Translations under genes and position numbers: made by a program
Notes under the pieces: model-generated
Seen by the model: the letters and a program-made list of their open reading frames with translations, nothing else
Databases searched by the model: none
Told to the model about the DNA's origin: nothing
Sequence record: LR756501.1
Direction: 5' to 3' (one strand)
Length of the DNA stretch: 64,000 bases
Shown here: piece after piece, positions 4,912-62,374 of the stretch
Layout of the letters: each line of letters starts with the position of its first letter
Numbering within the stretch: position 1 is the stretch's first letter

Positions 4912-5448
4912 TTATTTATCCCAATCTTCTTCCCCGTAGGGGTCTATTTCTTTTCTTAATTTAAACAAATTTATATTCACAAATTTAACACTATAATTAT
5001 TAAACACGTGAATAATAAACAGTACCATAAATACAAATAAAGCTATTACGTTACCTATAAAAATAATACAACAAAATATCGTAATAATCTGGTACCCTGC
5101 ACTAATCATTCCCATATCTTGATAAGTCATATTAAATGTTACTCTTTGTCCAACTTTTACAGAAAAATAAGTATCAGCGGTAACAAGAATCTCTTTAGTT
5201 TTTTCTACACTATCGAATTTCACAATAAGTTTTTTCTGTATAGAGTAAACATCATTACCCTTATCTCTAAGTTCGTCCTGATATCTATATTTTACAACGC
5301 CACTATAATCTTTTTTACCAACTATTTTTTCACATCTTTTACCTGTGAACATTATTACAGGCAATATGGTCACTAATAATATAGTAAACCATATTTTATT
5401 GATTTCAGGGAATTTACTTCCTATGTGTTTTAATACTATCTTGTACAT
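4912..5448 (-). CDS. membrane protein with C-terminal DPYGEEDW tag
   Basis: Two hydrophobic segments; ends EIDPYGEEDWDK. Confidence 0.7.
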   Translation of the reverse strand: MYKIVLKHIGSKFPEINKIWFTILLVTILPVIMFTGKRCEKIVGKKDYSGVVKYRYQDELRDKGNDVYSIQKKLIVKFDSVEKTKEILVTADTYFSVKVGQRVTFNMTYQDMGMISAGYQIITIFCCIIFIGNVIALFVFMVLFIIHVFNNYSVKFVNINLFKLRKEIDPYGEEDWDK

Positions 5449-13998: not shown

Positions 13999-14760
13999 TT
14001 ATCTAGCCATCTTAAACCAAGATGTCGTACTTTGTTCTTTTATGTATGTTTTTACTTCTTCCACCATTTCCTTACCCTGTGTTATAATATCATTAGCGTT
14101 ATATGTAAAGTTACCAGGCATATTGAAATTAAACCTACCCAACAATTCACCCATTCTCGCTCTACATGTTCCAATTATAAATCTTTTAAACATTTCAAAA
14201 TCAAAGAGTTCTTCTTCCTGAATTCTTACCCAACATTCTAACATGAGGTTAGATTGATCTTCAATTGCTGATAAGAAGTGTAATCTTTTATTAATATGGT
14301 TAAAGTTATGAGCAATAGTATTTTTAGTAAGTTTGTTTATTTCATCAGCGAAATAACTGATAGTTGAACGATATAAAGCTAAATCACCAGCAGTAGTTAC
14401 AAATGAAGTTAAGAATGGTTGGTTAGTTACACCTAGGTTTATTGAGAGGTTAGGTGCTTGAATACCTAATCTAAACAAGGATGTATCTTCCATTTTAACA
14501 ATTTTGGTGATGGCTTCTACTTCTTCAGGTAATTGGAAGTATTGGAAAGTCGCGTATGTTTCACGCATAAGGTGGTCGTATTTAACAAAATAGTAAAATT
14601 TTTGAACAGCGAATTGGTAATTCTTGTAGAACCATTCTAGAGTAATTTCTTTGATCATACGTTTGACTTCTTGATCTGGCAACACTTTTGGAAGAGCCCC
14701 AGAGAAAGTTAAATCTTGTTGAACTATATCTATTAATTGTTCTAAAGTAATTGAAGCCAT
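13999..14760 (-). CDS. neck/head-completion protein, T4 gp13-like
   Basis: C-terminal LLGRFNFNMPGNFTYNANDIITQG resembles the gp13 L-G-x-x-x-x-L-P-G-G-x-T pattern. Confidence 0.65.
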   Translation of the reverse strand: MASITLEQLIDIVQQDLTFSGALPKVLPDQEVKRMIKEITLEWFYKNYQFAVQKFYYFVKYDHLMRETYATFQYFQLPEEVEAITKIVKMEDTSLFRLGIQAPNLSINLGVTNQPFLTSFVTTAGDLALYRSTISYFADEINKLTKNTIAHNFNHINKRLHFLSAIEDQSNLMLECWVRIQEEELFDFEMFKRFIIGTCRARMGELLGRFNFNMPGNFTYNANDIITQGKEMVEEVKTYIKEQSTTSWFKMAR

Positions 14761-16762: not shown

Positions 16763-18397
16763 TTACTGACTATAAATTTTATCGTAAAACCTTGTTATTA
16801 CATCTATTATTTTCTTTATCTTACCTTCTTTCCTTAACTTCTTGAAAACTAAATTCTCAATAGAAAATTCTCCTTCTTCTGTAAGACCTTCTTTTCTAGA
16901 CTTCATAATCTTAGATTTTAACTCATTGGCGTTTTCGTAATATTCTTCTGCTTCTTCGGGTGATAAATCTTGTTTAGATAACTTTTCATATTTAAGTATA
17001 TCATATACCCTAGCGTCGTACTTCACATTCACGTCTTTAGTATCTACATTGGGTGGATTGTAAACAGGCTTTGTTATCCATTCGTCATTTAATAACGAAT
17101 ACAAACCTGTTGCGTTATGTTCTTCTGTTTCATCTTGAATATACAACTCTACATCGTGTCCTTTAATGACTATATTATGCCTAAGGTTCCATATAAATCT
17201 TTGACCGTCAATAGCTTTCTTAACAAGATCAGTATCTTCATTAATATCTTTAAAATCACATACTATATGAACATCAATATCTGATTCTTCTGTATAGTTA
17301 TAATTTGCCATAGAACCAGTAAGATGAATATCTTTTATTTCTGTTTCTAATTCAACGTCGTTAAAGAAATCTTTTGCTATTTTAATAAGTTTTTCTCTTA
17401 TTCTTTCTATGAGTTTATCATCTTCCCATAAATCTTGGCAAAGAGTTTTCTTATAAGGAATTTTTCTTTCTAGTACAGCTTCTTTTCTTTTACACATTAA
17501 ATCTATTGTTCTATAATTACGTGTTTGTCCACCATCGAATCTAACGTCCCATTCAAATGCTTCTGGCCATGTTCTCTTTTTTGGCTTATTTAAAATAACA
17601 CCAATTCTTCCAACTAGTCCCCCATTTATCCCTCTACCTCTAGCGTAAAAACCATCTGGTCTCAATCTTACTTCCTCTCCTTGTTCAAATTTATAATCAT
17701 TTGGTGCTTCCATCCAAATATCATCGTAATCCCATTCTTCTTCACCATAAGGATCGAAATCATTATTTTCCTTCACATCGCTCCATTCTTCTTCACCATA
17801 TGGATCTTCTTTTGTATAAACCCTTTTTGTTTTTTTGACTTTTGGTTTTATTGTAAAAGTATCACAACCTTTACTATCAACTAAACAATAACCGTCTTCT
17901 GATTGACCAGAAGCGTAATCTTCATAAGAACAAGAATCACCGTTAAAGAATTTACATTCATAATCTTTAGACTCTTTTAGCATATCATCCCATTCTTCTT
18001 CCCCGTAAGGATCAAATTGTTTCATATCATCTAAGAATTTTTGTTTTGCTTCAGCCTTCCTTATTTTTTCTTCATCTCTTTCTTTTCTATTATTATTAAA
18101 TTCATTCTTTTTATCTTTATATTCTTTCTCAGTAGAATAAAGATCTTCTCTATTTATCCATTTAATCTCTTTCCCACTTTTCTTGTTTCTTAAAGCGTAC
18201 CAAATTAACCCATTACCATCCTCATATGTATTAATAACTTCGTTTTCACCGTAATATTTAGATAACATTTGAAATTCAGCAACGTACCAAACGGTATCAC
18301 CTTTCTTAAATTTACTAGCTCTTAAAAGATTAGATAACCTCTTATCAAATTCACTAAGCTCAAATTCTTCTTTTATAAATGAATTGTATTTTAACAT
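16763..18397 (-). CDS. multidomain protein: SH3-like modules, 3x DPYGEEEW, C-terminal Pol-beta-superfamily nucleotidyltransferase
   Basis: LTGSMANYNY..SDIDVH..DVELY = GS/DxD/third acid pattern. Confidence 0.8.
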   Translation of the reverse strand: MLKYNSFIKEEFELSEFDKRLSNLLRASKFKKGDTVWYVAEFQMLSKYYGENEVINTYEDGNGLIWYALRNKKSGKEIKWINREDLYSTEKEYKDKKNEFNNNRKERDEEKIRKAEAKQKFLDDMKQFDPYGEEEWDDMLKESKDYECKFFNGDSCSYEDYASGQSEDGYCLVDSKGCDTFTIKPKVKKTKRVYTKEDPYGEEEWSDVKENNDFDPYGEEEWDYDDIWMEAPNDYKFEQGEEVRLRPDGFYARGRGINGGLVGRIGVILNKPKKRTWPEAFEWDVRFDGGQTRNYRTIDLMCKRKEAVLERKIPYKKTLCQDLWEDDKLIERIREKLIKIAKDFFNDVELETEIKDIHLTGSMANYNYTEESDIDVHIVCDFKDINEDTDLVKKAIDGQRFIWNLRHNIVIKGHDVELYIQDETEEHNATGLYSLLNDEWITKPVYNPPNVDTKDVNVKYDARVYDILKYEKLSKQDLSPEEAEEYYENANELKSKIMKSRKEGLTEEGEFSIENLVFKKLRKEGKIKKIIDVITRFYDKIYSQ

Positions 18398-18479: not shown

Positions 18480-19760
18480 ATGGTAAGAAAGAAAGATGAA
18501 GACATTATTACAGCTCTAAGAAATGTGATGGATAATAGTTACTTCAGGGATATGACTTCTGCTCTCAAATCTAATGGGAAAAGTAAGCCAGTTGAAGACT
18601 TTAACATCCTTGATGAATACCAATCAACATTCAACGAGACACCAAGTTTATTAAAAATAACTCACGACGATTGTGATCTTTTCTTATACGAAAAACTAAA
18701 GAAAATGTTAAAAGAGGAATTTGGGGCATCCAGAGTTCTATTTAACGACACAGAATACAATTTAAAAAGAGAAAAATATATAGCCAATCGCGAAGTGTGG
18801 TACATCGCCGACGGCTACCTTCTTAACCTATGGACAAGCGAATCTAAAAATATATACGCTAACCCAGAATTAGACGTTAAACTAAATAAACACGACCAAC
18901 TTATAGAAGGTAACACTCTTCTCGTTCCACCACACGGTTCAAATAGAACAAATAAAGATATAGAAGAAAGAGTTATTAAAACTTTCAAAACCACAACCAT
19001 CAAAGAATACGAAAGAAACTCTATCGGTATGATGAGCGTTGAAGGATCTGGTGATCTTTATGTTAAAGAATTTACACTAGATAAAAAGTTTAAAATCAAC
19101 GATCTAGACCTACACTACGGAGACGAGTTTAAAACATTCCACGCAGAACTCTTTAAAAAACTTAAAGGTGATAAAAAAGGATTAGTACTATTACACGGCG
19201 ATCCAGGGACAGGTAAAACATTCTATATTAGATACTTACTTCAATGTTTGGCTAAAACGAAGAAGAAGGTTTTATATTTTCCACCAAGTATGGTAGAGGC
19301 TGTAACAGATCCAACGTTCTTTAATTTCATCACAAATTGGACTATGGATAACGGTAAGAATTCTATTCTTCTAATTGAAGACGCCGAACCACTTTTGGTA
19401 TCGAGAGAGGCTAATCGTAATATGGGTATAACAAACCTTCTTAATTTAACTGATGGTATATTGAATGATATATTATCTATTCAGATTATAGCCACATTTA
19501 ATACTAGTCTTGGTGAATTAGATAAGGCATTACTTAGACCAGAAAGGTTAATTGCTAGAAAAGAATTCAAGAAACTAACAGTTGATAATTCTAAAAAATT
19601 GGTAGAATTGTTGGGTATGGATCCAGCAACAGTAACAAAAGAAATGTCTTTGGCTGAAATTTATTCTGTGAAGAATGATAACGAAGTTTTACTTCACGGT
19701 GTGGATAAAAACAAGGCGGCTGGGGAAAGAACAGCGATAGGATTTGGTAATAAAAGATAA
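18480..19760 (+). CDS. AAA+ ATPase
   Basis: GDPGTGKT, LLIEDAE, ATFNT, DKALLRPERL. Confidence 0.9.
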   Translation: MVRKKDEDIITALRNVMDNSYFRDMTSALKSNGKSKPVEDFNILDEYQSTFNETPSLLKITHDDCDLFLYEKLKKMLKEEFGASRVLFNDTEYNLKREKYIANREVWYIADGYLLNLWTSESKNIYANPELDVKLNKHDQLIEGNTLLVPPHGSNRTNKDIEERVIKTFKTTTIKEYERNSIGMMSVEGSGDLYVKEFTLDKKFKINDLDLHYGDEFKTFHAELFKKLKGDKKGLVLLHGDPGTGKTFYIRYLLQCLAKTKKKVLYFPPSMVEAVTDPTFFNFITNWTMDNGKNSILLIEDAEPLLVSREANRNMGITNLLNLTDGILNDILSIQIIATFNTSLGELDKALLRPERLIARKEFKKLTVDNSKKLVELLGMDPATVTKEMSLAEIYSVKNDNEVLLHGVDKNKAAGERTAIGFGNKR

Positions 19761-33271: not shown

Positions 33272-33598
33272 ATGAAGAAAATTTCTAAACTTATAGAAGA
33301 GGAATATAAATTAACAGAAAGTGTTAATTCTAATGATCCATATGGTGAAGAAGACTGGGACGAAGATTACGATGTAATCTTTGAAAGACCTGGTTTTATC
33401 GCCAAACACAAGAAAGGCGGTAGTGTTGGCGAGTGGACTTGGAATGTTAATATTCCCAATTATTGGCTTCACGTGATAGAAAAAAATCCAGAATGGGCAA
33501 ATCATGCTGATAAAAAAGAATTTTATTGTGGTTTCTTGGCTGGGTTTACATTGGCTGACGAGTTTTACGAAAAAATAAAAGGGCAGTCGCGTGATTAA
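33272..33598 (+). CDS. hypothetical, N-terminal DPYGEEDW tag (array gene 1)
   Basis: MKKISKLIEEEYKLTESVNSNDPYGEEDWD. Confidence 0.75.
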   Translation: MKKISKLIEEEYKLTESVNSNDPYGEEDWDEDYDVIFERPGFIAKHKKGGSVGEWTWNVNIPNYWLHVIEKNPEWANHADKKEFYCGFLAGFTLADEFYEKIKGQSRD

Positions 33599-33872
33599 GA
33601 AATTCAAAATATTTGAGTTAAATACACCTGAAGATCCATATGGTGAAGAAGAATGGGAAGCACCAACTGGTTATTTCTATGTTTATAGACATAGAAACGA
33701 TGTGGATCAACAGTACGCTGAAGAATATTTTAAGAAGAAAAAACCTAGAATTTACGCTAGTTTTGAAGAAGCTGATAGAGCTTTAGATAGAGATTGTTTT
33801 GACGATTGTGGTGAGGCAATTTTCGCTTTACTTCCCGATGGTAAGATAAAAAGAGAAAGATTCAGAAGATGA
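33591..33872 (+). CDS. hypothetical, N-terminal leader + DPYGEEEW (array gene 2)
   Basis: GTG start; MIKKFKIFELNTPEDPYGEEEWE. Confidence 0.75.
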   Translation: MIKKFKIFELNTPEDPYGEEEWEAPTGYFYVYRHRNDVDQQYAEEYFKKKKPRIYASFEEADRALDRDCFDDCGEAIFALLPDGKIKRERFRR

Positions 33873-34339
33873 TAAGGAAATATAAATTATTTGAATTAAA
33901 AGGACACGAAGACGTCGATCCTTACGGTGAAGAAGACTGGGACGTTGGTGATGATGATATTATCAGAAAGATGAGAAAAGAGCTTCTTCATTATTTTAAT
34001 GAGTTATATGGTGATAAATACGATGATAAAATTAAAACAATGAAATTTGTTCCAAATAAAGAAGAATATATTTACGAGATAGTTAGTTATACAGATGAAG
34101 GTAGGAAAAATGGAACATTAGGATTCGTTGAGGCTAGATCCAAAACAGAAGCAAGAGTTATATATGTTCTTTGGGAAATGGTTAATAAAGTTAAACCGCG
34201 AGGAATTAGTGATATTCTATTTACAGGATTCTACGGGGCTGAAAGGATAACCAGAGCAGAGATTGAAAATAAAATAGCCTATCACTATCAAAAATTAAGT
34301 GAACTGGAAAACATAAAAGACTTTTCAGAATTTATGTAA
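33869..34339 (+). CDS. hypothetical, N-terminal leader + DPYGEEDW (array gene 3)
   Basis: MIRKYKLFELKGHEDVDPYGEEDWD. Confidence 0.75.
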   Translation: MIRKYKLFELKGHEDVDPYGEEDWDVGDDDIIRKMRKELLHYFNELYGDKYDDKIKTMKFVPNKEEYIYEIVSYTDEGRKNGTLGFVEARSKTEARVIYVLWEMVNKVKPRGISDILFTGFYGAERITRAEIENKIAYHYQKLSELENIKDFSEFM

Positions 34340-34794
34340 TGATAAAGAAATTCAGAATATTTGAAAACGATGAATTAGATCCTTACGGTGAAGAGATTTG
34401 GGATCAACCAAATCAAAGTGTTCTTCACGCTCTTAATTTATTAGGTGATTATCACAACGAAATAGCAGAAAACACATGGAACCAAAAGATTGAAATGACT
34501 GGTTCTGTTTGGCATATATTCGGTGATTCTGAATATGTGATAGTGACTGATAAAGGGGTTTACGCTTTTAGAATAACAGAAGACAATTGTGTTCCAGATT
34601 ACTTAGGCGCAGACGATAATGGACTAGATTTATTTATAGGGTACGATACTCTATATCATAATCACTATGGCGTTTCACCTGATGGTTTTTCAATTAAACC
34701 ATCTTTTAAAGAAATATTTGAAAAATCATTTAAAGATTTGAATGTAGATTTAACAATCACATCAGTATATAGAAAAAAATTAGTACTACAATGA
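34339..34794 (+). CDS. hypothetical, N-terminal leader + DPYGEEIW (array gene 4)
   Basis: MIKKFRIFENDELDPYGEEIWD. Confidence 0.75.
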   Translation: MIKKFRIFENDELDPYGEEIWDQPNQSVLHALNLLGDYHNEIAENTWNQKIEMTGSVWHIFGDSEYVIVTDKGVYAFRITEDNCVPDYLGADDNGLDLFIGYDTLYHNHYGVSPDGFSIKPSFKEIFEKSFKDLNVDLTITSVYRKKLVLQ

Positions 34795-35279
34795 TAAAGA
34801 AATTTAGATTATTCGAAGCATCCCACGACGACGTTGATCCATATGGTGAAGAGATATGGGATGATATTATGGGATTTGAAATTAAGAAAGTTGGACTAAA
34901 AGACGGTGGTTATTACTATTTTGCCTCTTTCCACGATCAAGAACCTGTTAACAGACCAGGTAGTATATTTCAATTTCAAGGTGTAATGGAAAATAACTAT
35001 CTCCTAGCCATTGGTGATATGTTCAATAATGGATATTCTTTTAGATTTTATCCGATGCCAGATTGGGAATGGGTGGAATTAACACAAGAAGAAAAGGACG
35101 CATTCTTCAATGATGAATTGGAAGTTAAAGTCTTCCATCTTTTTGCTAGAAAAGGTTTCATGGGTAGAAGAGGAGATCCAGATGAAAATGAAGGAGAGAT
35201 GAAAGATTTAAAGTTTTCTGAAATTCTTAAAATATTTAATATCACCAAGGAAGAATTCATAATGGCTAAAAATCAATAA
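34791..35279 (+). CDS. hypothetical, N-terminal leader + DPYGEEIW (array gene 5)
   Basis: MIKKFRLFEASHDDVDPYGEEIWD. Confidence 0.75.
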   Translation: MIKKFRLFEASHDDVDPYGEEIWDDIMGFEIKKVGLKDGGYYYFASFHDQEPVNRPGSIFQFQGVMENNYLLAIGDMFNNGYSFRFYPMPDWEWVELTQEEKDAFFNDELEVKVFHLFARKGFMGRRGDPDENEGEMKDLKFSEILKIFNITKEEFIMAKNQ

Positions 35280-36283: not shown

Positions 36284-37469
36284 ATCTGTAATTTTTTTTA
36301 TCGTAGGTCTGTTGATCCTGACCGTATTCGTCTCTTTCAAATATCTGAATATCAATCTTCCTGGCTAAAGTTAATAGGATTTGAGACTCTTTGTAGTGTT
36401 TAATTATAATCATATTATCGTCTGCTGGGGTAGTAGTATCTGCTGTTATTTTATTTCTATGAAAATATATAATCATTTCCCATTTATCTGCTGGTCTTTT
36501 AACGTCTATTCTCAAATAAGATTTTGGTGGTTGGTTGAGATTAATTTTAGTTCTAAACCATTCTTCGTTCTTTGGGTAAGGTCTGTACCAAGTAAGTTTA
36601 TTTTCTTTAGTTTCCTTGTAAATTTTCATTTTCAATTGTACTTCAGATTTTTCTTTTCCTTTTTCGTCTTCTTCTGATGTGGAAGTGGACGCAGGCATGT
36701 CGTCATTCAACATTTTCAATCTTTCGTACTGTTCCTCAGATATGAAATCACTTTCGGGACAAACGTCTCCTAGAATTTTCATAAGTCCTGTAAGAGGATT
36801 ATAAAATTCTATTTTATAAGGAGTATCTTTCTTTAGTCTTTTAATTCTATCACCAACGTAATAAACAGTATCACCAGACTTAAATTTTTTAACAAATGAG
36901 TCGTAATTACTAACTGTTGGTTTATTTGAAGCCGACCTAGACACGTCGCCAGATTTTTTCNNNNNNNNNNNNNNNNNNNNNGATATAAAATCTCTATTAA
37001 TTACACTAACTGGTATTTGTCCCCATTCATTGTTAGCGAAAATATCAAATACGTTTGTGTTTCTATTAGCCCATAATCTGAAAGCGTGGTCGTGATCGAA
37101 CTGGTCGTCGTCACCATTATAGTAAACAACGTCACCATTTCTAAAATCATTTTTCTTTACGGGGGTAGCTATTCCAGATTCTTTCCAAGATTGTCTTCTT
37201 TTTTCTTCGTTATATTCCATTTCCGAAATGAAATCATCTACTGAGAAATATGGAGCTCTACCATCTGGTAATCTAATAGAAAGACCGTAATACGATTCAG
37301 ATTTTGGACGACACTCAACGACCTTATAAGGAGTATCGTGTTTTACTACAGCCACGGGTCCAGATCCCTTACCACCACCAGTTGTTCCAGTGTAATATAT
37401 AGTATCACCACGTTTAAATTTAGCTTTATAAAGTGGAGTTTTATTAGGTCTATTAGCTACAGTAGTCAT
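36264..37469 (-). CDS. hypothetical with three F-x-x-G-D-x-[IV]-YY modules; spans assembly gap
   Basis: KFKRGDTIYY, DFRNGDVVYY, KFKSGDTVYY; frame across Ns unverified. Confidence 0.6.
   Translation of the reverse strand: MTTVANRPNKTPLYKAKFKRGDTIYYTGTTGGGKGSGPVAVVKHDTPYKVVECRPKSESYYGLSIRLPDGRAPYFSVDDFISEMEYNEEKRRQSWKESGIATPVKKNDFRNGDVVYYNGDDDQFDHDHAFRLWANRNTNVFDIFANNEWGQIPVSVINRDFIXXXXXXXXKKSGDVSRSASNKPTVSNYDSFVKKFKSGDTVYYVGDRIKRLKKDTPYKIEFYNPLTGLMKILGDVCPESDFISEEQYERLKMLNDDMPASTSTSEEDEKGKEKSEVQLKMKIYKETKENKLTWYRPYPKNEEWFRTKINLNQPPKSYLRIDVKRPADKWEMIIYFHRNKITADTTTPADDNMIIIKHYKESQILLTLARKIDIQIFERDEYGQDQQTYDKKNYRYENQRV
36961..36981. other. assembly gap (21 N)
   Basis: Run of n. Confidence 1.
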
Positions 37470-40993: not shown

Positions 40994-41428
40994 TTATTTG
41001 TTTATAATTCCGTTTGTTGTTTTAAAAAATCTATCCTTTTTAATATATTTAAAAAATAATGTATCTCCTACTTTTCTACTGTAATAAAAACTATCCCATT
41101 TATTATCTATATTGAGTTCTGGTAAACCTCCAGCAACTAACTCTGCGTAATAAGTGGTATCGATCATTCTCTGTATGATGATCAATTTATTTTGTGGGTC
41201 TTTATGTTTTATAATACAATATTCTTTCCAATATAGAGATTCTATTCTATTTTTCTTATTTAATTCATCTAAAGCTCTTATACCTGATATAACCACTATA
41301 GCAATAGTAACCCCGAATAAGAATTTTAATACCCATTTTATCTTAGGCCACCAAATAAATTTAAATTTATGTTCGTCTTCCCACTGCTCTTCACCGTAGG
41401 GGTCCACATTTTTTCTTATTTTTTTCAT
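40994..41428 (-). CDS. membrane-anchored protein with N-terminal DPYGEEQW tag
   Basis: MKKIRKNVDPYGEEQWED then one TM helix. Confidence 0.7.
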   Translation of the reverse strand: MKKIRKNVDPYGEEQWEDEHKFKFIWWPKIKWVLKFLFGVTIAIVVISGIRALDELNKKNRIESLYWKEYCIIKHKDPQNKLIIIQRMIDTTYYAELVAGGLPELNIDNKWDSFYYSRKVGDTLFFKYIKKDRFFKTTNGIINK

Positions 41429-42462
41429 CTTATAACTGGATTATATATTCCGTCATTATGTTTAATGGTATCGTCTTCCCATCGCTCTTCCCCGTAAGGA
41501 TCTAATTCTGTTATTTTTCTGTTCCTTTTAATAGCTACACAAAACAAATGATTTTCCTGTTGTACCTTAAAAGTCTCTATTTCAAATCCAATTCTTTCTA
41601 ATTCTTTTTTCAATTCATCATCGTAATCCACCTCTGTTGGTTGATTAAAGAAGTGGCAATATCCTCTACCCTTATCGTCCTTTAATCCCCATACCCAACT
41701 ATCCTTATTTTCTTCCGTCATTATGAAAGACGAAAATACCATTATACCATTATCATTCAACCTCTTAAAAGCCTTCTTTAAATAATTAAACCTTTGTTTT
41801 TGCGATAAATGTTGAAATACATTCATAGAATAGACTATATCTAAATCCCTGGGTATTTCCTTTGGAATTTTCCAACCGTCGTTCTCATATAGATTGGCGA
41901 ATCTGTCTATTCTTTTATCAATATCTATGCCAAAATATTCTATTCGTGGCATCACTTTAGCACAATTATTATGTAACCATTCAGCGAAAGCACCAAACCC
42001 GTAACCTATTTCTAATATCTTTATATTTTTACCACTATTTAAAGTGTCTTGAATTTTGGTAGCCACAGCAGTTAAAGCCCCCTGTGTGTAAGCAAAACTA
42101 TTATTCGCAATGTTGGCTGTGTGCTCGTCTTTAACTTTTGCTCCTGTTACCGCAAGAAGTTTATATCCGTCATCTAATGTTTTCCAAAATCCTTGATTAT
42201 CAATATTTTCAGGAAATAATTTCTTTAATACTTTTTTAGGAACTATAGTTCTTCCAAATTGTTTAACTGACGGCTGTCCTATTTTTTTTGCTATTTCAGC
42301 CTTTTGTTCGTCAGTCATTTCTATTGTGACGACTTTTGCTTTATCGCACATATCGTCCCAAAACTGTTTGCTAGCTGGTAATATTTTATCTTTGATTTTC
42401 AGAGTGTAACCATCGTTATAATATTTATAATAAGGCCACAAAAAGTTCTTCCATTTCTTCAT
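41425..42462 (-). CDS. class I SAM-dependent methyltransferase with C-terminal DPYGEERW tag
   Basis: ILEIGYGFG, GIDID, DIVYSMNVFQHL. Confidence 0.8.
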   Translation of the reverse strand: MKKWKNFLWPYYKYYNDGYTLKIKDKILPASKQFWDDMCDKAKVVTIEMTDEQKAEIAKKIGQPSVKQFGRTIVPKKVLKKLFPENIDNQGFWKTLDDGYKLLAVTGAKVKDEHTANIANNSFAYTQGALTAVATKIQDTLNSGKNIKILEIGYGFGAFAEWLHNNCAKVMPRIEYFGIDIDKRIDRFANLYENDGWKIPKEIPRDLDIVYSMNVFQHLSQKQRFNYLKKAFKRLNDNGIMVFSSFIMTEENKDSWVWGLKDDKGRGYCHFFNQPTEVDYDDELKKELERIGFEIETFKVQQENHLFCVAIKRNRKITELDPYGEERWEDDTIKHNDGIYNPVIR

Positions 42463-58581: not shown

Positions 58582-59280
58582 TTATACGTATTCCCAATCT
58601 TCTTCACCGTAAGGATCTTCGGCTGTTATTGTTCTATGTATTTCCCTTTTAATTTCACAATTAATTAATCCATCATATGTTAAGCGATAGATTTTTTCGT
58701 TTTCGTCTCGAAATACAAAATGTGAAAATCTATGGTTTCTATCGTAAAGAACACCAGTTGCTATTAATTTGATTATATTAACTCTATTAAGATAATCTGT
58801 GAATCTAATAGTTTTACCTACAACGTTATCACCAAAATATCTAAGTGAAGCGGAAATAATGTCTTGTTGAAAATCTGAAAATACGATTTCATCGTTCGCG
58901 CTTTCACTAATATCTTCTTCACCGTAGGGGTCTAATTCATTAACATTTCTGTTAATTTTTCTAGACCAAGTTATTGTTGATTTTTCAGGGATAAGAAAAT
59001 CCTCTTCGTGACCGTTACTAACTCTACCAATAAAATGAAACTCATATCTCCTTTCATCTAGCACAACTTCACTAACTTTTATAGTTGCCCTGGCGTGCCA
59101 CGTTCTAAGAGGCATTTTAAGATACTCAGAAACATTAACTGTTCTACCTACCATTTCTTTTTTTAAATATTCAAATATATTATCGTAAGTTAAAAACTCA
59201 TCTCCCATCTCCCAAATAGATCTTGATATGGTTATATTTTCAACTGATTCTTTAACATAAGATGAAAAATTAATGATCAT
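58582..59280 (-). CDS. two-module hypothetical, each module ending in DPYGEE
   Basis: Leader MIINFSSYVKES; internal DPYGEEDI, terminal DPYGEEDWEYV. Confidence 0.75.
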   Translation of the reverse strand: MIINFSSYVKESVENITISRSIWEMGDEFLTYDNIFEYLKKEMVGRTVNVSEYLKMPLRTWHARATIKVSEVVLDERRYEFHFIGRVSNGHEEDFLIPEKSTITWSRKINRNVNELDPYGEEDISESANDEIVFSDFQQDIISASLRYFGDNVVGKTIRFTDYLNRVNIIKLIATGVLYDRNHRFSHFVFRDENEKIYRLTYDGLINCEIKREIHRTITAEDPYGEEDWEYV

Positions 59281-59746
59281 CCCAATCCTCCTCTCCGTAA
59301 GGATCGTGCTTAGATACTATGACTTTTGGTTGAATAAACGTGAATTCATACATTTCTTTAGTTGATAAAATGAAAAGAGAGTCATCAGCTTTTACGTTGA
59401 TAACGATAGAATCATCTATTACCTCAACACCGTGATTTTTACCAATGGTAATTTTATGACCACCCTTTGCTCCAAATACTAAGAAAGGTTCGTTTTGACT
59501 AATTAAAACTGTACTAGTGCCAATATGTCTCAATCTAATGTATCTACCACCAGACTCACATATCGCTTTAATTCTATTACCGCAAGCAATTATATCTTTA
59601 TGATCCAAATTGTACAATTCTTTCAAAGACATAACCATAGGTTTGCTTTTCCTATCATCTTCTGATTCGTGTGCTGGAAGAGCTAACGGCGCTTTCTTGA
59701 AAAGACTAGCATCAGATTGATCGAATTGTTCGTAAGTTCTTATCAT
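59270..59746 (-). CDS. hypothetical, leader + C-terminal DPYGEEDW
   Basis: MIRTYEQF...KHDPYGEEDWDDH; TTATATATA at 59752-59760. Confidence 0.75.
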   Translation of the reverse strand: MIRTYEQFDQSDASLFKKAPLALPAHESEDDRKSKPMVMSLKELYNLDHKDIIACGNRIKAICESGGRYIRLRHIGTSTVLISQNEPFLVFGAKGGHKITIGKNHGVEVIDDSIVINVKADDSLFILSTKEMYEFTFIQPKVIVSKHDPYGEEDWDDH

Positions 59747-59774
59747 AACCCTATATATAAAATTTTAATTTTAA

Positions 59775-60200
59775 TTAATCGTCCCACTCCTCTTCACCGT
59801 ATGGATCTTCTATTGTATATATTCTTTCGACTATTGCAACTTTAACAGGATATTCTAGGTTAACCATTATTTCAGCGTTTCTAATATCAAACCATATTTT
59901 ATAATTAGTTTTATTAGTGTGTCTATCATACTTTTCATGAAATTTTATTCCATCAACTATTACAGTCATTGGATCTACAACTTTAACTATTTCTCTTTGT
60001 ACAGCGTCTCCGTCTCTTTTTAAATTTTCATACATCCAATGAAATTGTACTCTCTTATTTAAAAACAATTTATCCAGATGTCTTGTGAGAAGTCCGTTAT
60101 CATTGAGTTCCCACATCTCAATAGTATCAATATAATCGTCACATATTTTTAGAAGATCGTAAGATTTATAACTGGAGAAATTAGCAAACTCTTTAATCAT
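59775..60200 (-). CDS. hypothetical, leader + C-terminal DPYGEEEW
   Basis: Start MIKEFANF inside upstream tag; ends IEDPYGEEEWDD. Confidence 0.72.
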   Translation of the reverse strand: MIKEFANFSSYKSYDLLKICDDYIDTIEMWELNDNGLLTRHLDKLFLNKRVQFHWMYENLKRDGDAVQREIVKVVDPMTVIVDGIKFHEKYDRHTNKTNYKIWFDIRNAEIMVNLEYPVKVAIVERIYTIEDPYGEEEWDD

Positions 60201-60639
60201 CCCATTCCTCCTCTCCATATGGATCTAATGTTTTATCTACTTGTACTTTTTTCCTTTCTTCCTTTAAATGTACAATTATAGGTTCTAATGGGTAAACTTC
60301 ATATGTATCAATATGACCAGATACCATAAAACTTATTGTTACATCGAGATCAAAGAATGATGTTACATCTACACTCAATATAACACCAGTAATCTTCATT
60401 CCCCTTTTTTTATCTATGTTTCCTTGTGGGTTTACATACTCTTCATCTTTATAAAATGCACAAAGTTTATTTAACACTTTCCTTTTTAATCTCTCTTCAA
60501 ATTCTATACAATCAACAAAGTTATCATCTGGATTACAACATCTTTCACCTATATCAGTAATACTAACTTCTTCTGTGAATGGATATTCTAACAGGAGATC
60601 ATCTATTTTATTTTCAAATATTTCAAATTTAGTTATCAT
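60193..60639 (-). CDS. hypothetical, leader + C-terminal DPYGEEEW
   Basis: MITKFEIFE...TLDPYGEEEWDD. Confidence 0.75.
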   Translation of the reverse strand: MITKFEIFENKIDDLLLEYPFTEEVSITDIGERCCNPDDNFVDCIEFEERLKRKVLNKLCAFYKDEEYVNPQGNIDKKRGMKITGVILSVDVTSFFDLDVTISFMVSGHIDTYEVYPLEPIIVHLKEERKKVQVDKTLDPYGEEEWDD

Positions 60640-61181
60640 AAATAAGCTTTCATCGTACTTGAAAAGAGTCTTGTCCTCACTCTATCAAGCACTATTTCTT
60701 TTTCTAAAATCCAACCCCAAGTGTCTTTTATATAAGGACGTTTATGTGGACCTATAACTAATAGATTATCAGTCGATTCCCCCAACGAAAACAAGAATGG
60801 TGGAAGTTTACTTTCATCTAATAGATGTAGAGCGTAACTACATATTACTAAAGAGTAAGAACGATTACGTAGTGACCCTTTCATAATATCTTCAAATTTC
60901 ATACTTAAACAAGGTCTACCAGTCTCTTTAGTATATTCAGTTGATAGAAAACCATCTATCGCTTCTATATTATGTACTCCTAACTCTTCAAGTATTTTAG
61001 TTACCTCGCCTTTACCAGCAGCTAAATCAAGCACACTGGTGAAATCTAAATCCCAATAATTATAAATATAGTTTATTGATTTTTTAATGGCCTCTTCGTG
61101 TGGGTTTTGATAATCCCCCGCGTGAAAAGCGTAAAAGTTTTTAACTCCGAATTTTTGATATTGACTTCTTATTGAATCCAT
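60636..61181 (-). CDS. class I SAM-dependent methyltransferase
   Basis: VLDLAAGKGE, YSLVICSYALHL; TTATATATA at 61187-61195. Confidence 0.8.
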   Translation of the reverse strand: MDSIRSQYQKFGVKNFYAFHAGDYQNPHEEAIKKSINYIYNYWDLDFTSVLDLAAGKGEVTKILEELGVHNIEAIDGFLSTEYTKETGRPCLSMKFEDIMKGSLRNRSYSLVICSYALHLLDESKLPPFLFSLGESTDNLLVIGPHKRPYIKDTWGWILEKEIVLDRVRTRLFSSTMKAYL

Positions 61182-61205
61182 AAACCTATATATAATTTTT
61201 TATAT

Positions 61206-61457
61206 TTAGGTTTCTTCCCAAGTCTCCTCGCCGTATGGATCGTTATCGTTAAAAACTCTTTTATATTTAATCCAATTATTACTAAATGTTTCTACTGCGT
61301 ATCTAAAGAATAGAGATCCGTATTCAGGTTTTGGATATATTTCCACATACCCACCGTCTAAATAATTCACATTTAGTTCGTAGCACATGTTACGGAAAAA
61401 TCCAAACCCTTCTTTACCCACGTAAAGATAATTATTAGTCCCAGTTTTCTTCTCCAT
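61206..61457 (-). CDS. small hypothetical, C-terminal DPYGEETW
   Basis: Ends KRVFNDNDPYGEETWEET; start uncertain (61457 or 61472). Confidence 0.65.
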   Translation of the reverse strand: MEKKTGTNNYLYVGKEGFGFFRNMCYELNVNYLDGGYVEIYPKPEYGSLFFRYAVETFSNNWIKYKRVFNDNDPYGEETWEET

Positions 61458-61680
61458 AAGGGTCAGCCTCACTAAAAATTCTTTTATACTTGTATGTTCT
61501 TATCCAGTTTTCTTCAAACTTTTCTTTGGAATCGTAAGCACATTGGTTTGCCCCAGAACTTCTCTGTGGATATACCATGTAAGGCCAAAATCCACCTATT
61601 TCTATTTCAAGGTCATATTCTCTTCCATGTACATATCCCATAGAACCATCTTGACCTTTGAATGTGAATTTACTCCTCAT
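61435..61680 (-). CDS. small hypothetical, C-terminal DPYGEENW
   Basis: Start MRSKF inside upstream tag; ends KRIFSEADPYGEENWD. Confidence 0.68.
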   Translation of the reverse strand: MRSKFTFKGQDGSMGYVHGREYDLEIEIGGFWPYMVYPQRSSGANQCAYDSKEKFEENWIRTYKYKRIFSEADPYGEENWD

Positions 61681-62374
61681 CCCAATCCTCCTCACCGTAG
61701 GGGTCTGCTTCACTAAATATAATCTTAGGCTCTTTATGACGTCTAAAACTATTATTATCGGTTGTTACTCCAGCAATATCACCAGTTAATCTATAAAAAA
61801 CATCAGTATCATCATCGTAAGTGAAAGCTTCAGCAACGCTAGAAACCCTACCAGTTCTTGTACCTCTCCAATCAACGAAATCTAAAAGTTCTCCAATTTT
61901 AAATTTAGCGTCATCAACATTCTTCCTTGTTGTTTTTAAATAACGTTCTCTAACGACATTTCTACCCCCTTGCATATTCTCAACATGGTACTCTATTGTG
62001 TTGAGATCTTCCATGCTTATGTTAGATCTCTTAATAACTAAGGGTTCGTGGGACATAAAACCGTTTCCGTATATACTATATACTATATCACCAGTTTTAA
62101 ATTTTCCTATATTTAAATCACCACAATAATCACCTTTCTTAATTTTCTTAATTTTCTTTTCTGTGGTCCATAATAGAAGTCCACCACCCATATCAAGTTG
62201 ATATTCAAACGTGGTTTTACTCCAACCTAAATCCCTTATTTGGAAGATTTTAGCTTTTACAAATTCAAAATTGCGATAGAATTCAGTGCCAGTGGTATTA
62301 TAAGCGACAAATTCACCAACTTTGAATCTCCCACCTCTTCCCACAAATCTGCTTTGATTTTGATAATGTTTCAT
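61670..62374 (-). CDS. hypothetical with three F-K-x-G-[DE] modules, C-terminal DPYGEEDW
   Basis: RFKVGEFV, KFKTGDIV, KFKIGELL; start at ATGA overlap. Confidence 0.72.
   Translation of the reverse strand: MKHYQNQSRFVGRGGRFKVGEFVAYNTTGTEFYRNFEFVKAKIFQIRDLGWSKTTFEYQLDMGGGLLLWTTEKKIKKIKKGDYCGDLNIGKFKTGDIVYSIYGNGFMSHEPLVIKRSNISMEDLNTIEYHVENMQGGRNVVRERYLKTTRKNVDDAKFKIGELLDFVDWRGTRTGRVSSVAEAFTYDDDTDVFYRLTGDIAGVTTDNNSFRRHKEPKIIFSEADPYGEEDWDEE

What the first reader, a model, noticed from the sequence alone, without database searches (positions are those of the whole stretch)
16763..18397. Nucleotidyltransferase carrying three copies of the tag between accessory modules
Seen: leader MLKYNSFIKEE, SH3-like segment (KFKKGDTVWY), tag, Cys-rich segment (CKFFNGDSCSY..YCLVDSKGC), tag, tag, second SH3-like segment, then a Pol-beta-type NTase (GS..DID..DVELY). 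Tags are followed by LKES/VKEN, resembling the E-ending leader. Established: Pol-beta-superfamily enzymes include protein Tyr nucleotidylators (GlnE, GlnD), tRNA/RNA tailing enzymes and cyclic-nucleotide synthases. Inference: either a heavily tagged cargo/polyprotein or the writer that modifies the tag Tyr.
Basis: partly seen in the sequence, partly recalled or inferred. Interest (0 to 1): 0.65.

Follow-up and report, generated by a model that had tools for sequence, protein, structure and literature searches.

The report
Modular tagged phage nucleotidyltransferase, probable capsid cargo
A 544-residue protein of the 735-kb "Mahaphage" joins an uncharacterised phage nucleotidyltransferase to three small add-on modules through a 10-residue motif (DPYGEExW) found in about 9% of this phage's proteins; it is most likely an enzyme packed into the capsid, not the enzyme that modifies the motif.

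Summary
ORF 16763-18397 (-) encodes 544 aa with three DPYGEEEW copies, a leader ending in Glu, a 4-Cys segment and a Pol-beta NTase with intact catalytic residues.

- **Source:** the window is 100% identical to LR756501.1, the 735-kb uncultured phage.
- **The tag:** about 106-109 copies lie in 91 of ~1017 crude ORFs, against 0 in a reversed-pattern control. Four sister huge phages and one smaller phage that carry the same NTase family have no exact copy.
- **The NTase core:** it belongs to a large family of ~244-aa stand-alone phage proteins (phrog_36119). This argues against the "tag writer" reading.
- **Module shuffling:** orthologues at the same locus differ by whole modules. At least one breakpoint lies inside the tag-coding repeats. 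One strain variant has the gene split just after a tag.
- **The leader:** it resembles the T4 capsid-targeting sequence. The phage's protease-scaffold protein has 12 tandem copies of that motif. Hydrophobic-x-Glu sites sit at four of the five junctions.
- **Virion evidence:** a 34%-identical homologue was detected by mass spectrometry in cyanophage S-CREM2 virions.

Best reading: a capsid-targeted, probably processed, modular cargo enzyme. The tag is a disordered junction or docking motif with no known partner. The NTase substrate is unknown.

The parts
16763..18397 (-). Whole ORF, 544 aa plus stop (P0001): modular NTase
   Evidence: 100% identical to LR756501.1 457823-459457
18365..18397 (-). 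Leader, aa 1-11 (MLKYNSFIKEE). T4-CTS-like, with an I-K-E putative protease site
   Evidence: Strict CTS-like N-termini occur in 32 of 1017 ORFs, against 0.2% of internal Met positions
18017..18310 (-). Module A, aa 30-127: small beta-barrel of Tudor/PWWP/chromo (SH3-fold) type followed by a ~38-residue charged helix
   Evidence: AF2 pLDDT ~90. Foldseek probability ~1.0, rmsd 2.5 A over 79 columns to NSD3 PWWP1, E 0.02-0.08. Conserved in P0003, P0010, P0012 and P0085
17984..18013 (-). Tag 1, aa 129-138 (DPYGEEEWDD), followed by MLKE
   Evidence: pLDDT <50
17846..17968 (-). Cys-rich module, aa 144-184, with C148, C156, C171 and C178. Possible zinc knuckle, seen only in this protein
   Evidence: absent from P0003, P0004 and L191; no Pfam hit and no homologue; pLDDT <35
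17777..17806 (-). Tag 2, aa 198-207 (DPYGEEEWSD), followed by VKE
17726..17755 (-). Tag 3, aa 215-224 (DPYGEEEWDY). It corresponds to the N-terminal leader-plus-tag unit of orthologue P0004
17483..17701 (-). Module C, aa 233-305: second putative small beta-barrel. Fold not verified
   Evidence: shared with P0004 and P0002; four short strands at low pLDDT; no Pfam hit
17468..17476 (-). V308-L-E310, a putative protease site directly before the NTase core. E310 is invariant in alignment A2
16766..17467 (-). NTase core, aa 311-544: Pol-beta fold plus a C-terminal four-helix bundle. Carries G361-S362, D373, D375 and E417
   Evidence: phrog_36119 at E 1.3e-39. Pfam NTP_transf_2, Polbeta and MTPAP-like at E 5e-5 to 3e-4. 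AF2 pLDDT 88. Invariant residues
15530..16609 (-). Downstream neighbour: SPFH/Band_7 membrane protein. Synteny is conserved in close relatives
18480..19760 (+). Divergent neighbour: AAA+ ATPase. Synteny is conserved in close relatives
13999..14760 (-). T4 gp13-like neck / head-completion protein. It places the locus near virion genes
   Evidence: phrog_211 at 9e-16; Phage_T4_gp13 in the orthologous loci

Best explanation
The gene encodes a composite protein of the 735-kb Mahaphage.

Shown:
- The last 234 residues are a catalytically intact member of a large, uncharacterised phage family of Pol-beta-fold nucleotidyltransferases. The family is usually a ~244-aa stand-alone protein.
- The first 310 residues are a lineage-specific pile-up of three small modules: a Tudor/PWWP-like barrel with a long helix, a 4-Cys knuckle, and a second putative barrel.
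- The modules are joined by disordered linkers, and each linker carries the motif [ILV]-D-P-Y-G-E-E-x-W-[DE]-[DE].
- The motif marks junctions and termini in about 9% of this phage's proteins.
- Orthologues gain or lose whole modules at these junctions. In one aligned case the breakpoints lie inside the tag-coding repeats. The gene can also split just after a tag.

Inferred:
- The N-terminal leader is a T4-type capsid-targeting sequence that docks onto the CTS-like repeats of the phage's protease-scaffold.
- The protein is therefore loaded into the prohead.
- The gp21-like protease trims it after hydrophobic-x-Glu sites: after the leader, after tags 1 and 2, and just before the NTase core.
- The NTase and its accessory modules are then delivered into the host with the DNA.
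- There the enzyme transfers a nucleotide to a substrate that is still unknown.

The tag is best read as a flexible docking or junction peptide with an unidentified partner. It is not the NTase's substrate.
For: Anatomy:
- ORF, tags and catalytic residues.
- Family: phrog_36119 at 1.3e-39; 1,574 relatives, most of the best 120 about 244 aa.
- Fold: AF2 pLDDT 88 with an NTase domain plus helical bundle.

Tag statistics:
- 109 versus 0 in the control.
- 91 of 1017 ORFs: 40 C-terminal, 21 N-terminal and 45 internal copies.
- Motif profile from 163 instances, with W kept in 155.
- Tags are disordered in AF2.

Shuffling at tags:
- P0003 is module A-tag-NTase. P0004 is leader-tag-module C-NTase. P0001 has both plus the Cys module. 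All sit at the same AAA / NTase / Band_7 / gp13 locus.
- The DNA alignment shows the Cys-module indel bounded by the tag 1 and tag 3 repeats.
- L191 has a TAC-to-TAG stop right after the tag. A new start lies in the GATGAT codons.

Capsid targeting:
- The T4 CTS is MKTYQEFIAE. P0034 starts MKKYNDFVAE.
- Leader consensus of 32 ORFs: M-I-K-K-Y-N-x-F-I-N-E. Scaffold: 12 tandem repeats with consensus SIKYSEYIAENLD.
- T4-like head genes are present: portal, phrog_207 protease, MCP and gp13.
- [LIV]-x-E sites lie at four junctions, and E310 is conserved.
- Leader-like N-termini are enriched among tagged ORFs: odds ratio 4.9, p 2e-9.
- Family member S-CREM2 ORF156 (34% identity, E 1e-29) gave 6 unique peptides in CsCl-purified virions.
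Against: - There are no proteomic or expression data for this uncultured phage.
- The virion-detected homologue is only 34% identical and belongs to a distant T4-like cyanophage.
- The cleavage rule (L/I-x-E) is taken from T4, partly from memory, and is not shown for this protease.
- [LIV]-x-E is common: about 19% of random 12-aa windows contain one.
- Lys-rich N-termini are common in AT-rich genomes.
- Several tagged proteins are membrane proteins (window 4912-5448 and 40994-41428; several small N-terminal TM proteins). Many tagged proteins lack the leader. The tag itself is therefore unlikely to be simply a capsid-loading signal.
- In two other huge phages the stand-alone NTase lies near RNA and DNA ligase-like genes. 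That fits a cytoplasmic RNA-repair role at least as well.
- The structural matches of the NTase are weak: best Foldseek E 3e-3, TM 0.2-0.3.
Confidence: 0.55

Rival explanations
1. Writer hypothesis: the NTase nucleotidylates (AMPylates or UMPylates) the Tyr of the DPYGEExW tag, on itself and on the ~90 other tagged proteins.
For: - Some Pol-beta-fold enzymes do modify Tyr: GlnE, DrrA and MntA (established knowledge).
- Very weak profile matches, limited to the G-S...D-x-D stretch, reach DrrA (E 0.16-0.4) and a minimal NTase (E 0.11), and MntA (14 bits against a cut-off of 60).
- The tag has an invariant Tyr, and three tags sit in cis.
Against: - The family is overwhelmingly tag-free.
- It occurs in LR756504, LR745206, LR756502, Lak-C1 and Molly_1. 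Their complete records contain zero exact DPYGEE patterns.
- Close orthologues carry one, two or three tags with a 98%-identical core.
- AF2 does not dock any tag into the active site.
- The tags come with the accessory modules, not with the core.
- A complex prediction could not be run.
Confidence: 0.05
2. Cytoplasmic polyprotein or linker hypothesis: the tag is the recognition element of a phage protease, or simply a flexible inter-domain linker. It lets fused enzymes be separated or tethered in the cytoplasm, with no role in capsid packaging.
For: - Tags lie between unrelated enzyme domains. One example is a 1179-aa deaminase plus CCA-adding/HD fusion with four tags. GNAT, methyltransferase and PRTase proteins are others.
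- C-terminal tags end at a fixed W+2 position, like the P-side remnant of a cleaved site.
- 22 of 60 non-terminal tags are followed within 12 aa by [LIVM]-x-E, against a 19% background.
- The L191 variant shows that the parts can exist as separate polypeptides.
Against: - Forty stand-alone proteins keep a C-terminal tag that would need no cleavage.
- Membrane proteins carry it.
- The only tagged protease-like protein appears to lack its catalytic His and Ser (residue identities recalled from T4 gp21).
- No cleavage data exist.
Confidence: 0.15
3. Recombination-junction hypothesis: the tag persists mainly because its coding sequence acts as a short repeat. Through it, small gene cassettes are duplicated, inserted, deleted, fused and split. 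The peptide only has to be a harmless disordered acidic linker.
For: - Indel breakpoints lie inside the tag repeats, and a fission occurs at a tag.
- Tag codons are skewed relative to the genome. CCT is 67% versus 34%, TAC 75% versus 35% and GGT 67% versus 51%. This suggests shared descent or gene conversion.
- Tags cluster in arrays of small genes.
- The GATGAT codons for the Asp-Asp after Trp contain an out-of-frame ATG that serves as the next gene's start.
Against: - All synonymous codons are used, while the residues D-P-Y-G-E-E-x-W stay fixed. W is kept in 155 of 163 instances. This indicates selection on the peptide.
- An 18-30-nt repeat with several variable third positions is poor recombination homology.
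- The fixed C-terminal end and the conservation across diverged IMG/VR relatives point to a protein-level function.
Confidence: 0.15
4. The NTase is a cytoplasmic RNA-end modifying or repair enzyme, for example one that tails tRNA or RNA 3' ends. The N-terminal barrels are nucleic-acid-binding accessory domains, and the leader is not a targeting signal.
For: - Stand-alone homologues in 400-kb and 531-kb phage contigs lie within ~2-8 kb of RNA_ligase, RLIG1-like and DNA_ligase_A_M genes.
- Tudor/PWWP-like barrels can bind nucleic acids. One Foldseek match is a PWWP domain bound to ssDNA.
- Weak Pfam similarity to the MTPAP-like poly(A) polymerase palm.
Against: - The neighbourhood is not conserved in this phage, Cr30, S-CRM01 or Molly.
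- The phage already encodes a bona fide class II CCA-adding enzyme.
- The S-CREM2 homologue is virion-associated. Packaging and RNA modification are not mutually exclusive, however.
Confidence: 0.2

Closest known systems
phrog_36119: ~244-aa stand-alone phage 'predicted nucleotidyltransferase' family (e.g. Synechococcus phage S-CREM2 ORF156, Caulobacter phage Cr30 gp180, Maribacter phage Molly_1 gp26)
   Same: Full-length match of aa 309-542 (E 1.3e-39). 55-98% identity to metagenomic huge-phage members and 30-42% to isolated phages. Same G-S / D-x-D / E motifs and C-terminal helical bundle. The S-CREM2 member is virion-associated.
   Different: The family is normally a single domain preceded by a ~10-aa leader. 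This member has a 310-aa N-terminal extension of three modules and three tags. No family member has a known substrate.
T4 internal proteins (IPI/II/III) and other CTS-bearing capsid cargo
   Same: The N-terminal ~10-aa leader has the pattern M-K-x-Y-x-x-F-I-x-E, ending in a hydrophobic-x-Glu site. The phage has T4-like head genes. A diverse set of unrelated proteins shares only the leader, as in the T-even IP loci (PMC3012670).
   Different: No sequence homology beyond the leader. Here 32 ORFs (strict pattern) to ~119 ORFs (loose pattern) carry it. The scaffold itself is built of 12 leader-like repeats. Packaging and cleavage are untested.
ANT(9)/AadA/KNTase/LinB-type nucleotidyltransferases (NTase domain plus C-terminal helical domain)
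   Same: Same two-domain layout and size (~250 aa). These are the top Foldseek rows: AAD(9) 6xz0 at E 2.7e-3, plus LinB, ANT(4') and AadA.
   Different: TM-scores are only 0.2-0.3 and identity 10-13%. There is no significant sequence match, and a phage has no obvious reason to modify antibiotics.
Minimal NTases (MNT/MntA antitoxins of HEPN-MNT systems; Sulfolobus 2rff)
   Same: The N-terminal NTase half superposes (2rff Z 7.0, 103 residues; MNT 8xeo/8xeh probability 0.84-0.87). Weak HMM hits to MntA and PADLOC PDC-S09. MntA AMPylates a Tyr of its toxin (established knowledge).
   Different: Scores are far below cut-offs (14 versus 60 bits). There is no HEPN partner gene, and the C-terminal bundle has no R-x4-6-H motif. 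The protein is twice the size.
Terminal cargo-loading peptides (encapsulin targeting peptides; C-terminal capsid-targeting tail of HK97-type proteases): an analogy for the tag only, recalled from memory
   Same: A short, conserved, disordered peptide at a terminus or linker of otherwise unrelated proteins. A paralogue of the head maturation protease carries the tag at its C-terminus.
   Different: No sequence similarity. The tag also sits on membrane proteins and on many ORFs without a leader. No receptor is identified and nothing has been tested.

Membership tests
Pol-beta superfamily nucleotidyltransferases | h-G-[GS] motif followed by [DE]-h-[DE] on the next strand | tested here: met
   G361-S362 and D373-I-D375 are invariant in 35- and 49-sequence alignments. 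Pfam NTP_transf_2 scores 21.8 bits against a cut-off of 21; Polbeta and MTPAP-like fall just below their cut-offs.
Pol-beta superfamily nucleotidyltransferases | Third acidic residue on a neighbouring strand, and the alpha-beta-alpha-beta-alpha-beta core fold | tested here: met
   E417 is invariant. The AF2 model at pLDDT 88 has helix-strand-strand-helix-strand topology. It superposes on the minimal NTase 2rff.
phrog_36119 (phage NTase of unknown function) | Full-length HMM match | tested here: met
   E 1.3e-39, aa 309-542 against profile positions 15-245 of 247.
Aminoglycoside/lincosamide NTases (ANT, KNTase, LinB) | Significant sequence or structure similarity over both domains | tested here: inconclusive
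   Top Foldseek rows, but E 3e-3 to 0.1, TM 0.2-0.3 and rmsd 12-15 A. No Pfam or NCBIfam ANT hit.
MntA/MNT antitoxin NTases | Score above the family cut-off and an adjacent HEPN toxin gene | tested here: not met
   NF047752 scores 14.1 bits against a cut-off of 60. The neighbours are Band_7 and AAA.
CD-NTases (cGAS/DncV-like, CBASS) | CD-NTase fold match with effector or Cap genes nearby | tested here: not met
   CdnE/CdnD rows at E 3e-3 to 0.1 with TM ~0.2. No PADLOC CD-NTase hit. No effector gene nearby.
GlnE/DrrA-type protein adenylyltransferases | Homology beyond the G-x11-D-x-D loop; a protein Tyr substrate | tested here: not met
   DrrA matches at E 0.16-0.4 over ~55 residues only. The substrate is not testable here.
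Class II CCA-adding / poly(A) polymerase (PF01743) | PolyA_pol head domain | tested here: not met
   No hit in P0001. The phage has a separate true member in a 1179-aa tagged fusion.
T4-type CTS-bearing capsid cargo | N-terminal ~10-aa leader M-K-x-[YF]-x-x-[FY]-[ILV]-x-E | tested here: met
   MLKYNSFIKEE against the T4 leader MKTYQEFIAE. N-terminal rate 3.1%, against 0.2% at internal Met.
T4-type CTS-bearing capsid cargo | A T4-like prohead protease and scaffold encoded by the phage | tested here: met
   The 807-aa protein matches phrog_207 at 4.9e-27 and PF03420 at 24 bits (below the cut-off of 27). It lies between the portal and MCP genes and has 12 CTS-like repeats.
T4-type CTS-bearing capsid cargo | Presence in the virion and removal of the leader by the prohead protease | not testable with these tools
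   Only indirect evidence: homologue S-CREM2 ORF156 was detected in virions.
SH3-fold 'Royal family' barrels (Tudor/PWWP/chromo), module A | Five-stranded barrel superposing on known members; an aromatic cage | tested here: inconclusive
   Foldseek probability ~1.0, rmsd 2.5-2.6 A over ~80 columns, but E 0.02-0.08. The aromatic cage was not examined. No Pfam hit.

The most novel reading that the evidence does not exclude
DPYGEExW is a lineage-specific addressing code. It would be a short docking peptide, placed at termini and linkers of ~90 otherwise unrelated proteins of the largest known phage: enzymes, small barrels, membrane anchors and a pseudo-protease. It would bring them to one common partner or compartment, such as an assembly site, a phage-built compartment or a host hub. 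Because its coding sequence is repeated, it would also drive the rapid shuffling, fusion and fission of the tagged modules. Together with ~30-120 T4-CTS-like leaders and a scaffold made of CTS repeats, this would mean the phage packages or co-localises an unusually large and fast-evolving arsenal of proteins.
Probability: 0.3. Interest if true: 0.8.

Novelty: new variant of a known kind. Interest (0 to 1): 0.62.

Why it matters
- The NTase family is widespread in large phages (Mahaphages, Lak, T4-like cyanophages, flavobacterial phages) and has no known function. Linking it to virion packaging gives a concrete hypothesis: an enzyme injected with the DNA.
- I found no other report of one 10-residue motif in ~9% of a phage's proteins. 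The only check was a single literature search for the motif. If the motif is a sorting or docking signal, it would be a simple handle for finding a hub protein or compartment in an uncultured 735-kb phage. It could also serve as a possible loading tag.
- The orthologue series (one, two or three modules, and a split gene) is a clear natural example of domain accretion at a repeated junction.

Tried and rejected
Searches that found nothing useful:
- Literature search for the motif found no phage paper.
- ESM Atlas on aa 1-300 gave no usable hit.
- Pfam on each accessory module alone gave nothing.
- Word search with Cys module plus module C (aa 139-310) gave no hit.
- In-genome BLAST found no paralogue of any module.
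- VIA-align wide search was dominated by generic helical bundles and said little about the NTase.
- No tRNA genes in the window.

Checks that ruled ideas out:
- A scan of 185,579 prokaryote genomes for the tag gave 72 single hits, roughly the number I estimated for chance. So there is no cellular proteome-wide counterpart and no host protein to point to as the mimicked partner.
- Is the tag's fixed C-terminal end forced by one type of gene overlap? No. Downstream starts lie anywhere from -11 to +41 nt.
- Does a sister Mahaphage have its own equivalent tag? No. The top 6-mers occur in at most 5 ORFs in the first 400 kb of LR745206.

Not run:
- Whole-record tag counts for the ENA contigs that hold stand-alone NTases were not possible. 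Their 16.7-kb loci have no tags.
I did not send it to any other tool.
No complex result exists either way.
- The big representative search was not used. The family is already well populated, and that library carries no names.
Full report
**Source and observation.**
- The window is 100% identical to LR756501.1, an unannotated 735,411-bp 'uncultured phage' record. Window position 1 is record position 441,061.
- This is the 735-kb Mahaphage-clade genome of Al-Shayeb et al. 2020, predicted to infect Bacteroidetes (PMC7162821).
- ORF 16763-18397 (-) is open, starts with ATG and encodes 544 aa.
The leader is MLKYNSFIKEE.
- The three tags are at aa 129-138, 198-207 and 215-224 (window 17984-18013, 17777-17806 and 17726-17755). 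Each has a different codon spelling.
- The other elements are four Cys (148, 156, 171, 178), G361-S362, D373-I-D375 and E417 in HDVELY.

**The NTase core.**
- Pfam gives only borderline hits: NTP_transf_2 at 21.8 bits (cut-off 21), plus Polbeta and MTPAP-like.
- PHROGs matches aa 309-542 end to end to phrog_36119, of unknown function (E 1.3e-39).
- A word search with aa 300-544 found 1,574 relatives. Most of the best-scoring 120 are 244-251 aa, and several lie on contigs of 250-530 kb.
- tblastn places the family in the other three Mahaphages, the Lak phages, Maribacter phages Molly and Colly, Caulobacter phage Cr30 and T4-like cyanophages.
- A 35-sequence alignment keeps G361, S362, D373, D375, H377, W403, N404, H407, E417, Y419, R501 and R522 invariant. 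The enzyme is expected to be active.
- AF2 (pLDDT 88) gives a Pol-beta-type alpha/beta domain plus a four-helix bundle.
- Foldseek's best rows are ANT(9), CdnE/CdnD, LinB, KNTase and minimal NTases. All are weak: E at least 2.7e-3 and TM 0.2-0.3.
- VIA-align gives Z 7.0 to the minimal NTase 2rff. Its list is otherwise filled with generic helical bundles.
- PDB profile search, NCBIfam and PADLOC give only sub-threshold matches to MNT and DrrA over the catalytic loop.
- The fold class is therefore certain, the subfamily is new and uncharacterised, and the substrate is unknown.

**The tag is a proteome-wide feature of this lineage.**
- The degenerate pattern for DPYGEE occurs 109 times in the record and never in the reversed control. 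It occurs 20 times in the window.
- With a crude ORF call (1017 ORFs, 93% coding), 91 ORFs carry 106 copies. Forty are C-terminal, 21 lie within 30 aa of the start and 45 are internal.
- DPYGEE is the top 6-mer of the proteome. The next unrelated one is in 11 ORFs.
- A scan of IMG/VR with one codon spelling found 45 loci on large phage contigs. Most of these loci hold further copies.
- From 163 distinct instances the motif is [ILV]-D-P-Y-G-E-E-[DNE]-W-[ED]-[DE], with W kept in 155. When it is terminal, the stop usually follows two residues after W.
- All synonymous codons are used, so the peptide is under selection. CCT, TAC and GGT are over-used relative to the genome, which suggests shared descent of the copies.
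- Three other Mahaphages, Lak-C1 and Molly_1 have no exact copy in their whole genomes.
- The first 400 kb of LR745206 has no analogous over-represented peptide.
- A scan of 185,579 prokaryote genomes gave 72 single hits, roughly the number I estimated for chance. They include the enolase of lactobacilli and a few short, probably mis-binned phage contigs.
- Tagged proteins are heterogeneous:
  - this NTase;
  - a 1179-aa deaminase plus CCA-adding/HD fusion with four tags;
  - a GNAT, a methyltransferase and a PRTase-like protein;
  - many small proteins in tandem arrays;
  - several membrane proteins;
  - a 178-aa paralogue of the head maturation protease.

**The N-terminal 310 residues are an accretion of modules at tags.**
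- Full-length AF2 predicts aa 30-127 confidently: a barrel plus a 38-residue helix at pLDDT ~90. It leaves aa 128-233, which contain all three tags, below pLDDT 50. Nothing docks onto the barrel or the NTase.
- Foldseek relates the barrel to PWWP, Tudor and chromo domains: probability ~1.0, rmsd 2.5 A, E 0.02-0.08.
- The Cys module and the second putative barrel have no Pfam hit. They have no paralogue in the genome and no stand-alone homologue.
- Close relatives hold the gene at the same locus, AAA / NTase / Band_7 / ... / T4 gp13-like. Their N-termini differ:
  - P0003 (98% identical core) is leader, barrel A, tag, DDMLKE, core.
  - P0004 is leader, tag, module C, core.
  - Others (P0009, P0025, P0068, P0028) have different modules, always separated by tags.
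- The DNA alignment shows that the segment holding the Cys module and tag 2 is bounded by the near-identical tag 1 and tag 3 repeats.
- In variant L191 a TAC-to-TAG change ends module A right after the tag (137 aa, P0122). A new ORF (P0002) then starts from an ATG inside the GATGAT (Asp-Asp) codons, and a 1-nt insertion restores the frame.
- Internal tags, C-terminal tags and leader-adjacent tags are therefore states that convert into one another. The three tags of P0001 are explained as follows. Tag 1 is the C-terminal tag of module A. Tag 2 is the C-terminal tag of the Cys module. Tag 3 is the N-terminal tag of a P0004-like gene.

**Evidence for capsid targeting.**
- The T4 capsid-targeting sequence is MKTYQEFIAE. 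It is cleaved off after the Glu (PMC8442874; PMC3012670).
- The stand-alone family member P0034 begins MKKYNDFVAE, and P0001 begins MLKYNSFIKEE.
- A strict version of this pattern starts 32 of the 1017 ORFs. It occurs at only 0.2% of internal Met positions, and most of those are alternative starts.
- A looser version is 4.9-fold enriched among tagged ORFs (p 2e-9).
- The phage has a T4-like head module: portal, an 807-aa phrog_207 maturation protease, MCP, and a gp13-like neck protein in the window.
- Residues 316-482 of that protease-scaffold protein are 12 tandem 14-aa repeats, consensus SIKYSEYIAENLD. This is the same Y-x-x-Y-I-A-E core as the leaders and the T4 CTS. A plausible docking surface for the leaders exists, and the repeats also carry many I-A-E sites.
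- In the first 320 aa of P0001 there are six [LIV]-x-E sites. Four lie at junctions: after the leader (8-10), after tag 1 (140-142), after tag 2 (208-210), and directly before the core (308-310). E310 is invariant in alignment A2 and at least 90% conserved in the wider family.
- Genome-wide, 22 of 60 non-terminal tags are followed within 12 aa by [LIVM]-x-E, against a 19% background. This enrichment is modest and the region is Glu-rich.
- S-CREM2 ORF156 is the family member found: 34% identity, E 1e-29, catalytic motifs kept. It is listed in the mass-spectrometric proteome of CsCl-purified virions with 6 unique peptides. Its two upstream neighbours are listed there too (PMC10665884).
- The packaging and processing of P0001 itself remain inferences.

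**What the tag does.**
- The data fit a short linear motif in a disordered context that works at either end or in linkers. That points to docking with a common partner. No partner could be identified.
- A purely capsid-loading role is unlikely. Membrane proteins and many ORFs without a leader carry the tag.
- A protease-site role and a recombination-junction role remain open (see rival explanations).
- The writer idea is the weakest. The enzyme family is older and far broader than the tag, and it occurs in tag-free genomes.

**Limits.**
- The ORF set is a crude call of my own.
- L191 is a 2.3-kb Logan contig, and its two changes were not checked against reads.
- The T4 protease specificity and the catalytic residues of gp21 are recalled knowledge, not tested here.
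- The two complex predictions could not be run.
- The masked N run at window 36961-36981 was left alone.

Noticed in passing
LR756501.1 73913-76336 (outside the window; loci L061/L002): The 807-aa head maturation protease carries a scaffold-like extension. Twelve perfect-period 14-aa tandem repeats (consensus SIKYSEYIAENLD) each resemble the T4 capsid-targeting sequence and contain an I-A-E site.
   Followed up: partly
LR756501.1 11314-11850 (outside the window; L058:11317-11850:-): A 178-aa paralogue of the head maturation protease (45% identical to the canonical one; phrog_207 at 3e-19) ends in a DPYGEENWSE tag. It appears to have lost the catalytic His and Ser: GYP in place of DHP, and RPRAAG in place of SSRAAG. 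The catalytic assignment is recalled from T4 gp21. The same tagged gene occurs on IMG/VR locus L014.
   Followed up: partly
LR756501.1 154863-158402 (outside the window; L065:14866-18402:-): A 1179-aa fusion of a cytidine/deoxycytidylate-type deaminase domain with a class II CCA-adding enzyme plus HD domain. Four DPYGEE tags at aa 40, 430, 508 and 583 lie between the parts.
   Followed up: partly
window 33272-35279 (+) and 58582-62374 (-): Tandem arrays of small genes (81-234 aa) that each carry the tag. In the first array it follows an MIKKF-type leader. In the second it is at the extreme C-terminus, with the next gene starting within or just after the Asp-Asp-stop codons. The 234-aa ORF at 61670-62374 contains three SH3-like 'FK.G' repeats before its tag.
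   Followed up: partly
window 4912-5448 (-), 40994-41428 (-); several more in the record: Membrane proteins with the tag on a short tail next to a transmembrane helix, at the C-terminus or right after the start. The flanking basic residues suggest the cytoplasmic side. This is hard to reconcile with a purely capsid-interior role for the tag.
   Followed up: no
window 41425-42462 (-): A class I SAM-dependent methyltransferase (Methyltransf_23/12/11) with a tag 24 residues before its C-terminus. It overlaps the start of a tagged membrane protein gene.
   Followed up: partly
Genome-contig loci L120, L133-L135, L139 and others: A ~440-aa protein of many Lactobacillaceae, which I take to be enolase (identified from memory, not checked), contains SIEDPYGEEDW. 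It matches the phage tag together with its upstream [IV]-[FY]-S-x-[ILV] context. This is probably coincidence, but it hints that the unit can form a strand, turn and helix start.
   Followed up: no
L056 (Prevotella phage Lak-C1, MK250029.1 ~488.9 kb): The Lak homologue of the NTase has four in-frame stop codons under table 11. This is consistent with the stop-codon recoding I recall being reported for Lak phages. The codon identity was not checked.
   Followed up: no
L117 674-1960 (-) (JGI 3300028283 contig, orthologous locus): An IS605 OrfB / TnpB (Cas12f-like) gene lies ~3 kb from the NTase orthologue in a close relative, on the far side of the AAA ATPase gene. The window has no such gene in the stretch examined beyond the AAA gene.
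   Followed up: no
LR756501.1, 8 ORFs (e.g. 573490-573855): A second, rarer shared peptide (WYKKGKL and variants) appears in several ORFs. In the three looked at (573490, 510586, 288595) a related form such as RWYEKGKL follows the CTS-like leader.
   Followed up: no
L049 and L052 (400-kb and 531-kb ENA phage contigs): The stand-alone NTase sits in a conserved block with SprT-like, rubrerythrin and a 209-aa DNA_ligase_A_M gene. In L049 the block also has RNA_ligase, an RLIG1-like gene and two radical SAM genes. This may be an RNA-repair neighbourhood.
   Followed up: partly
window 36961-36981: A run of 21 N, masked or an assembly gap.
   Followed up: no
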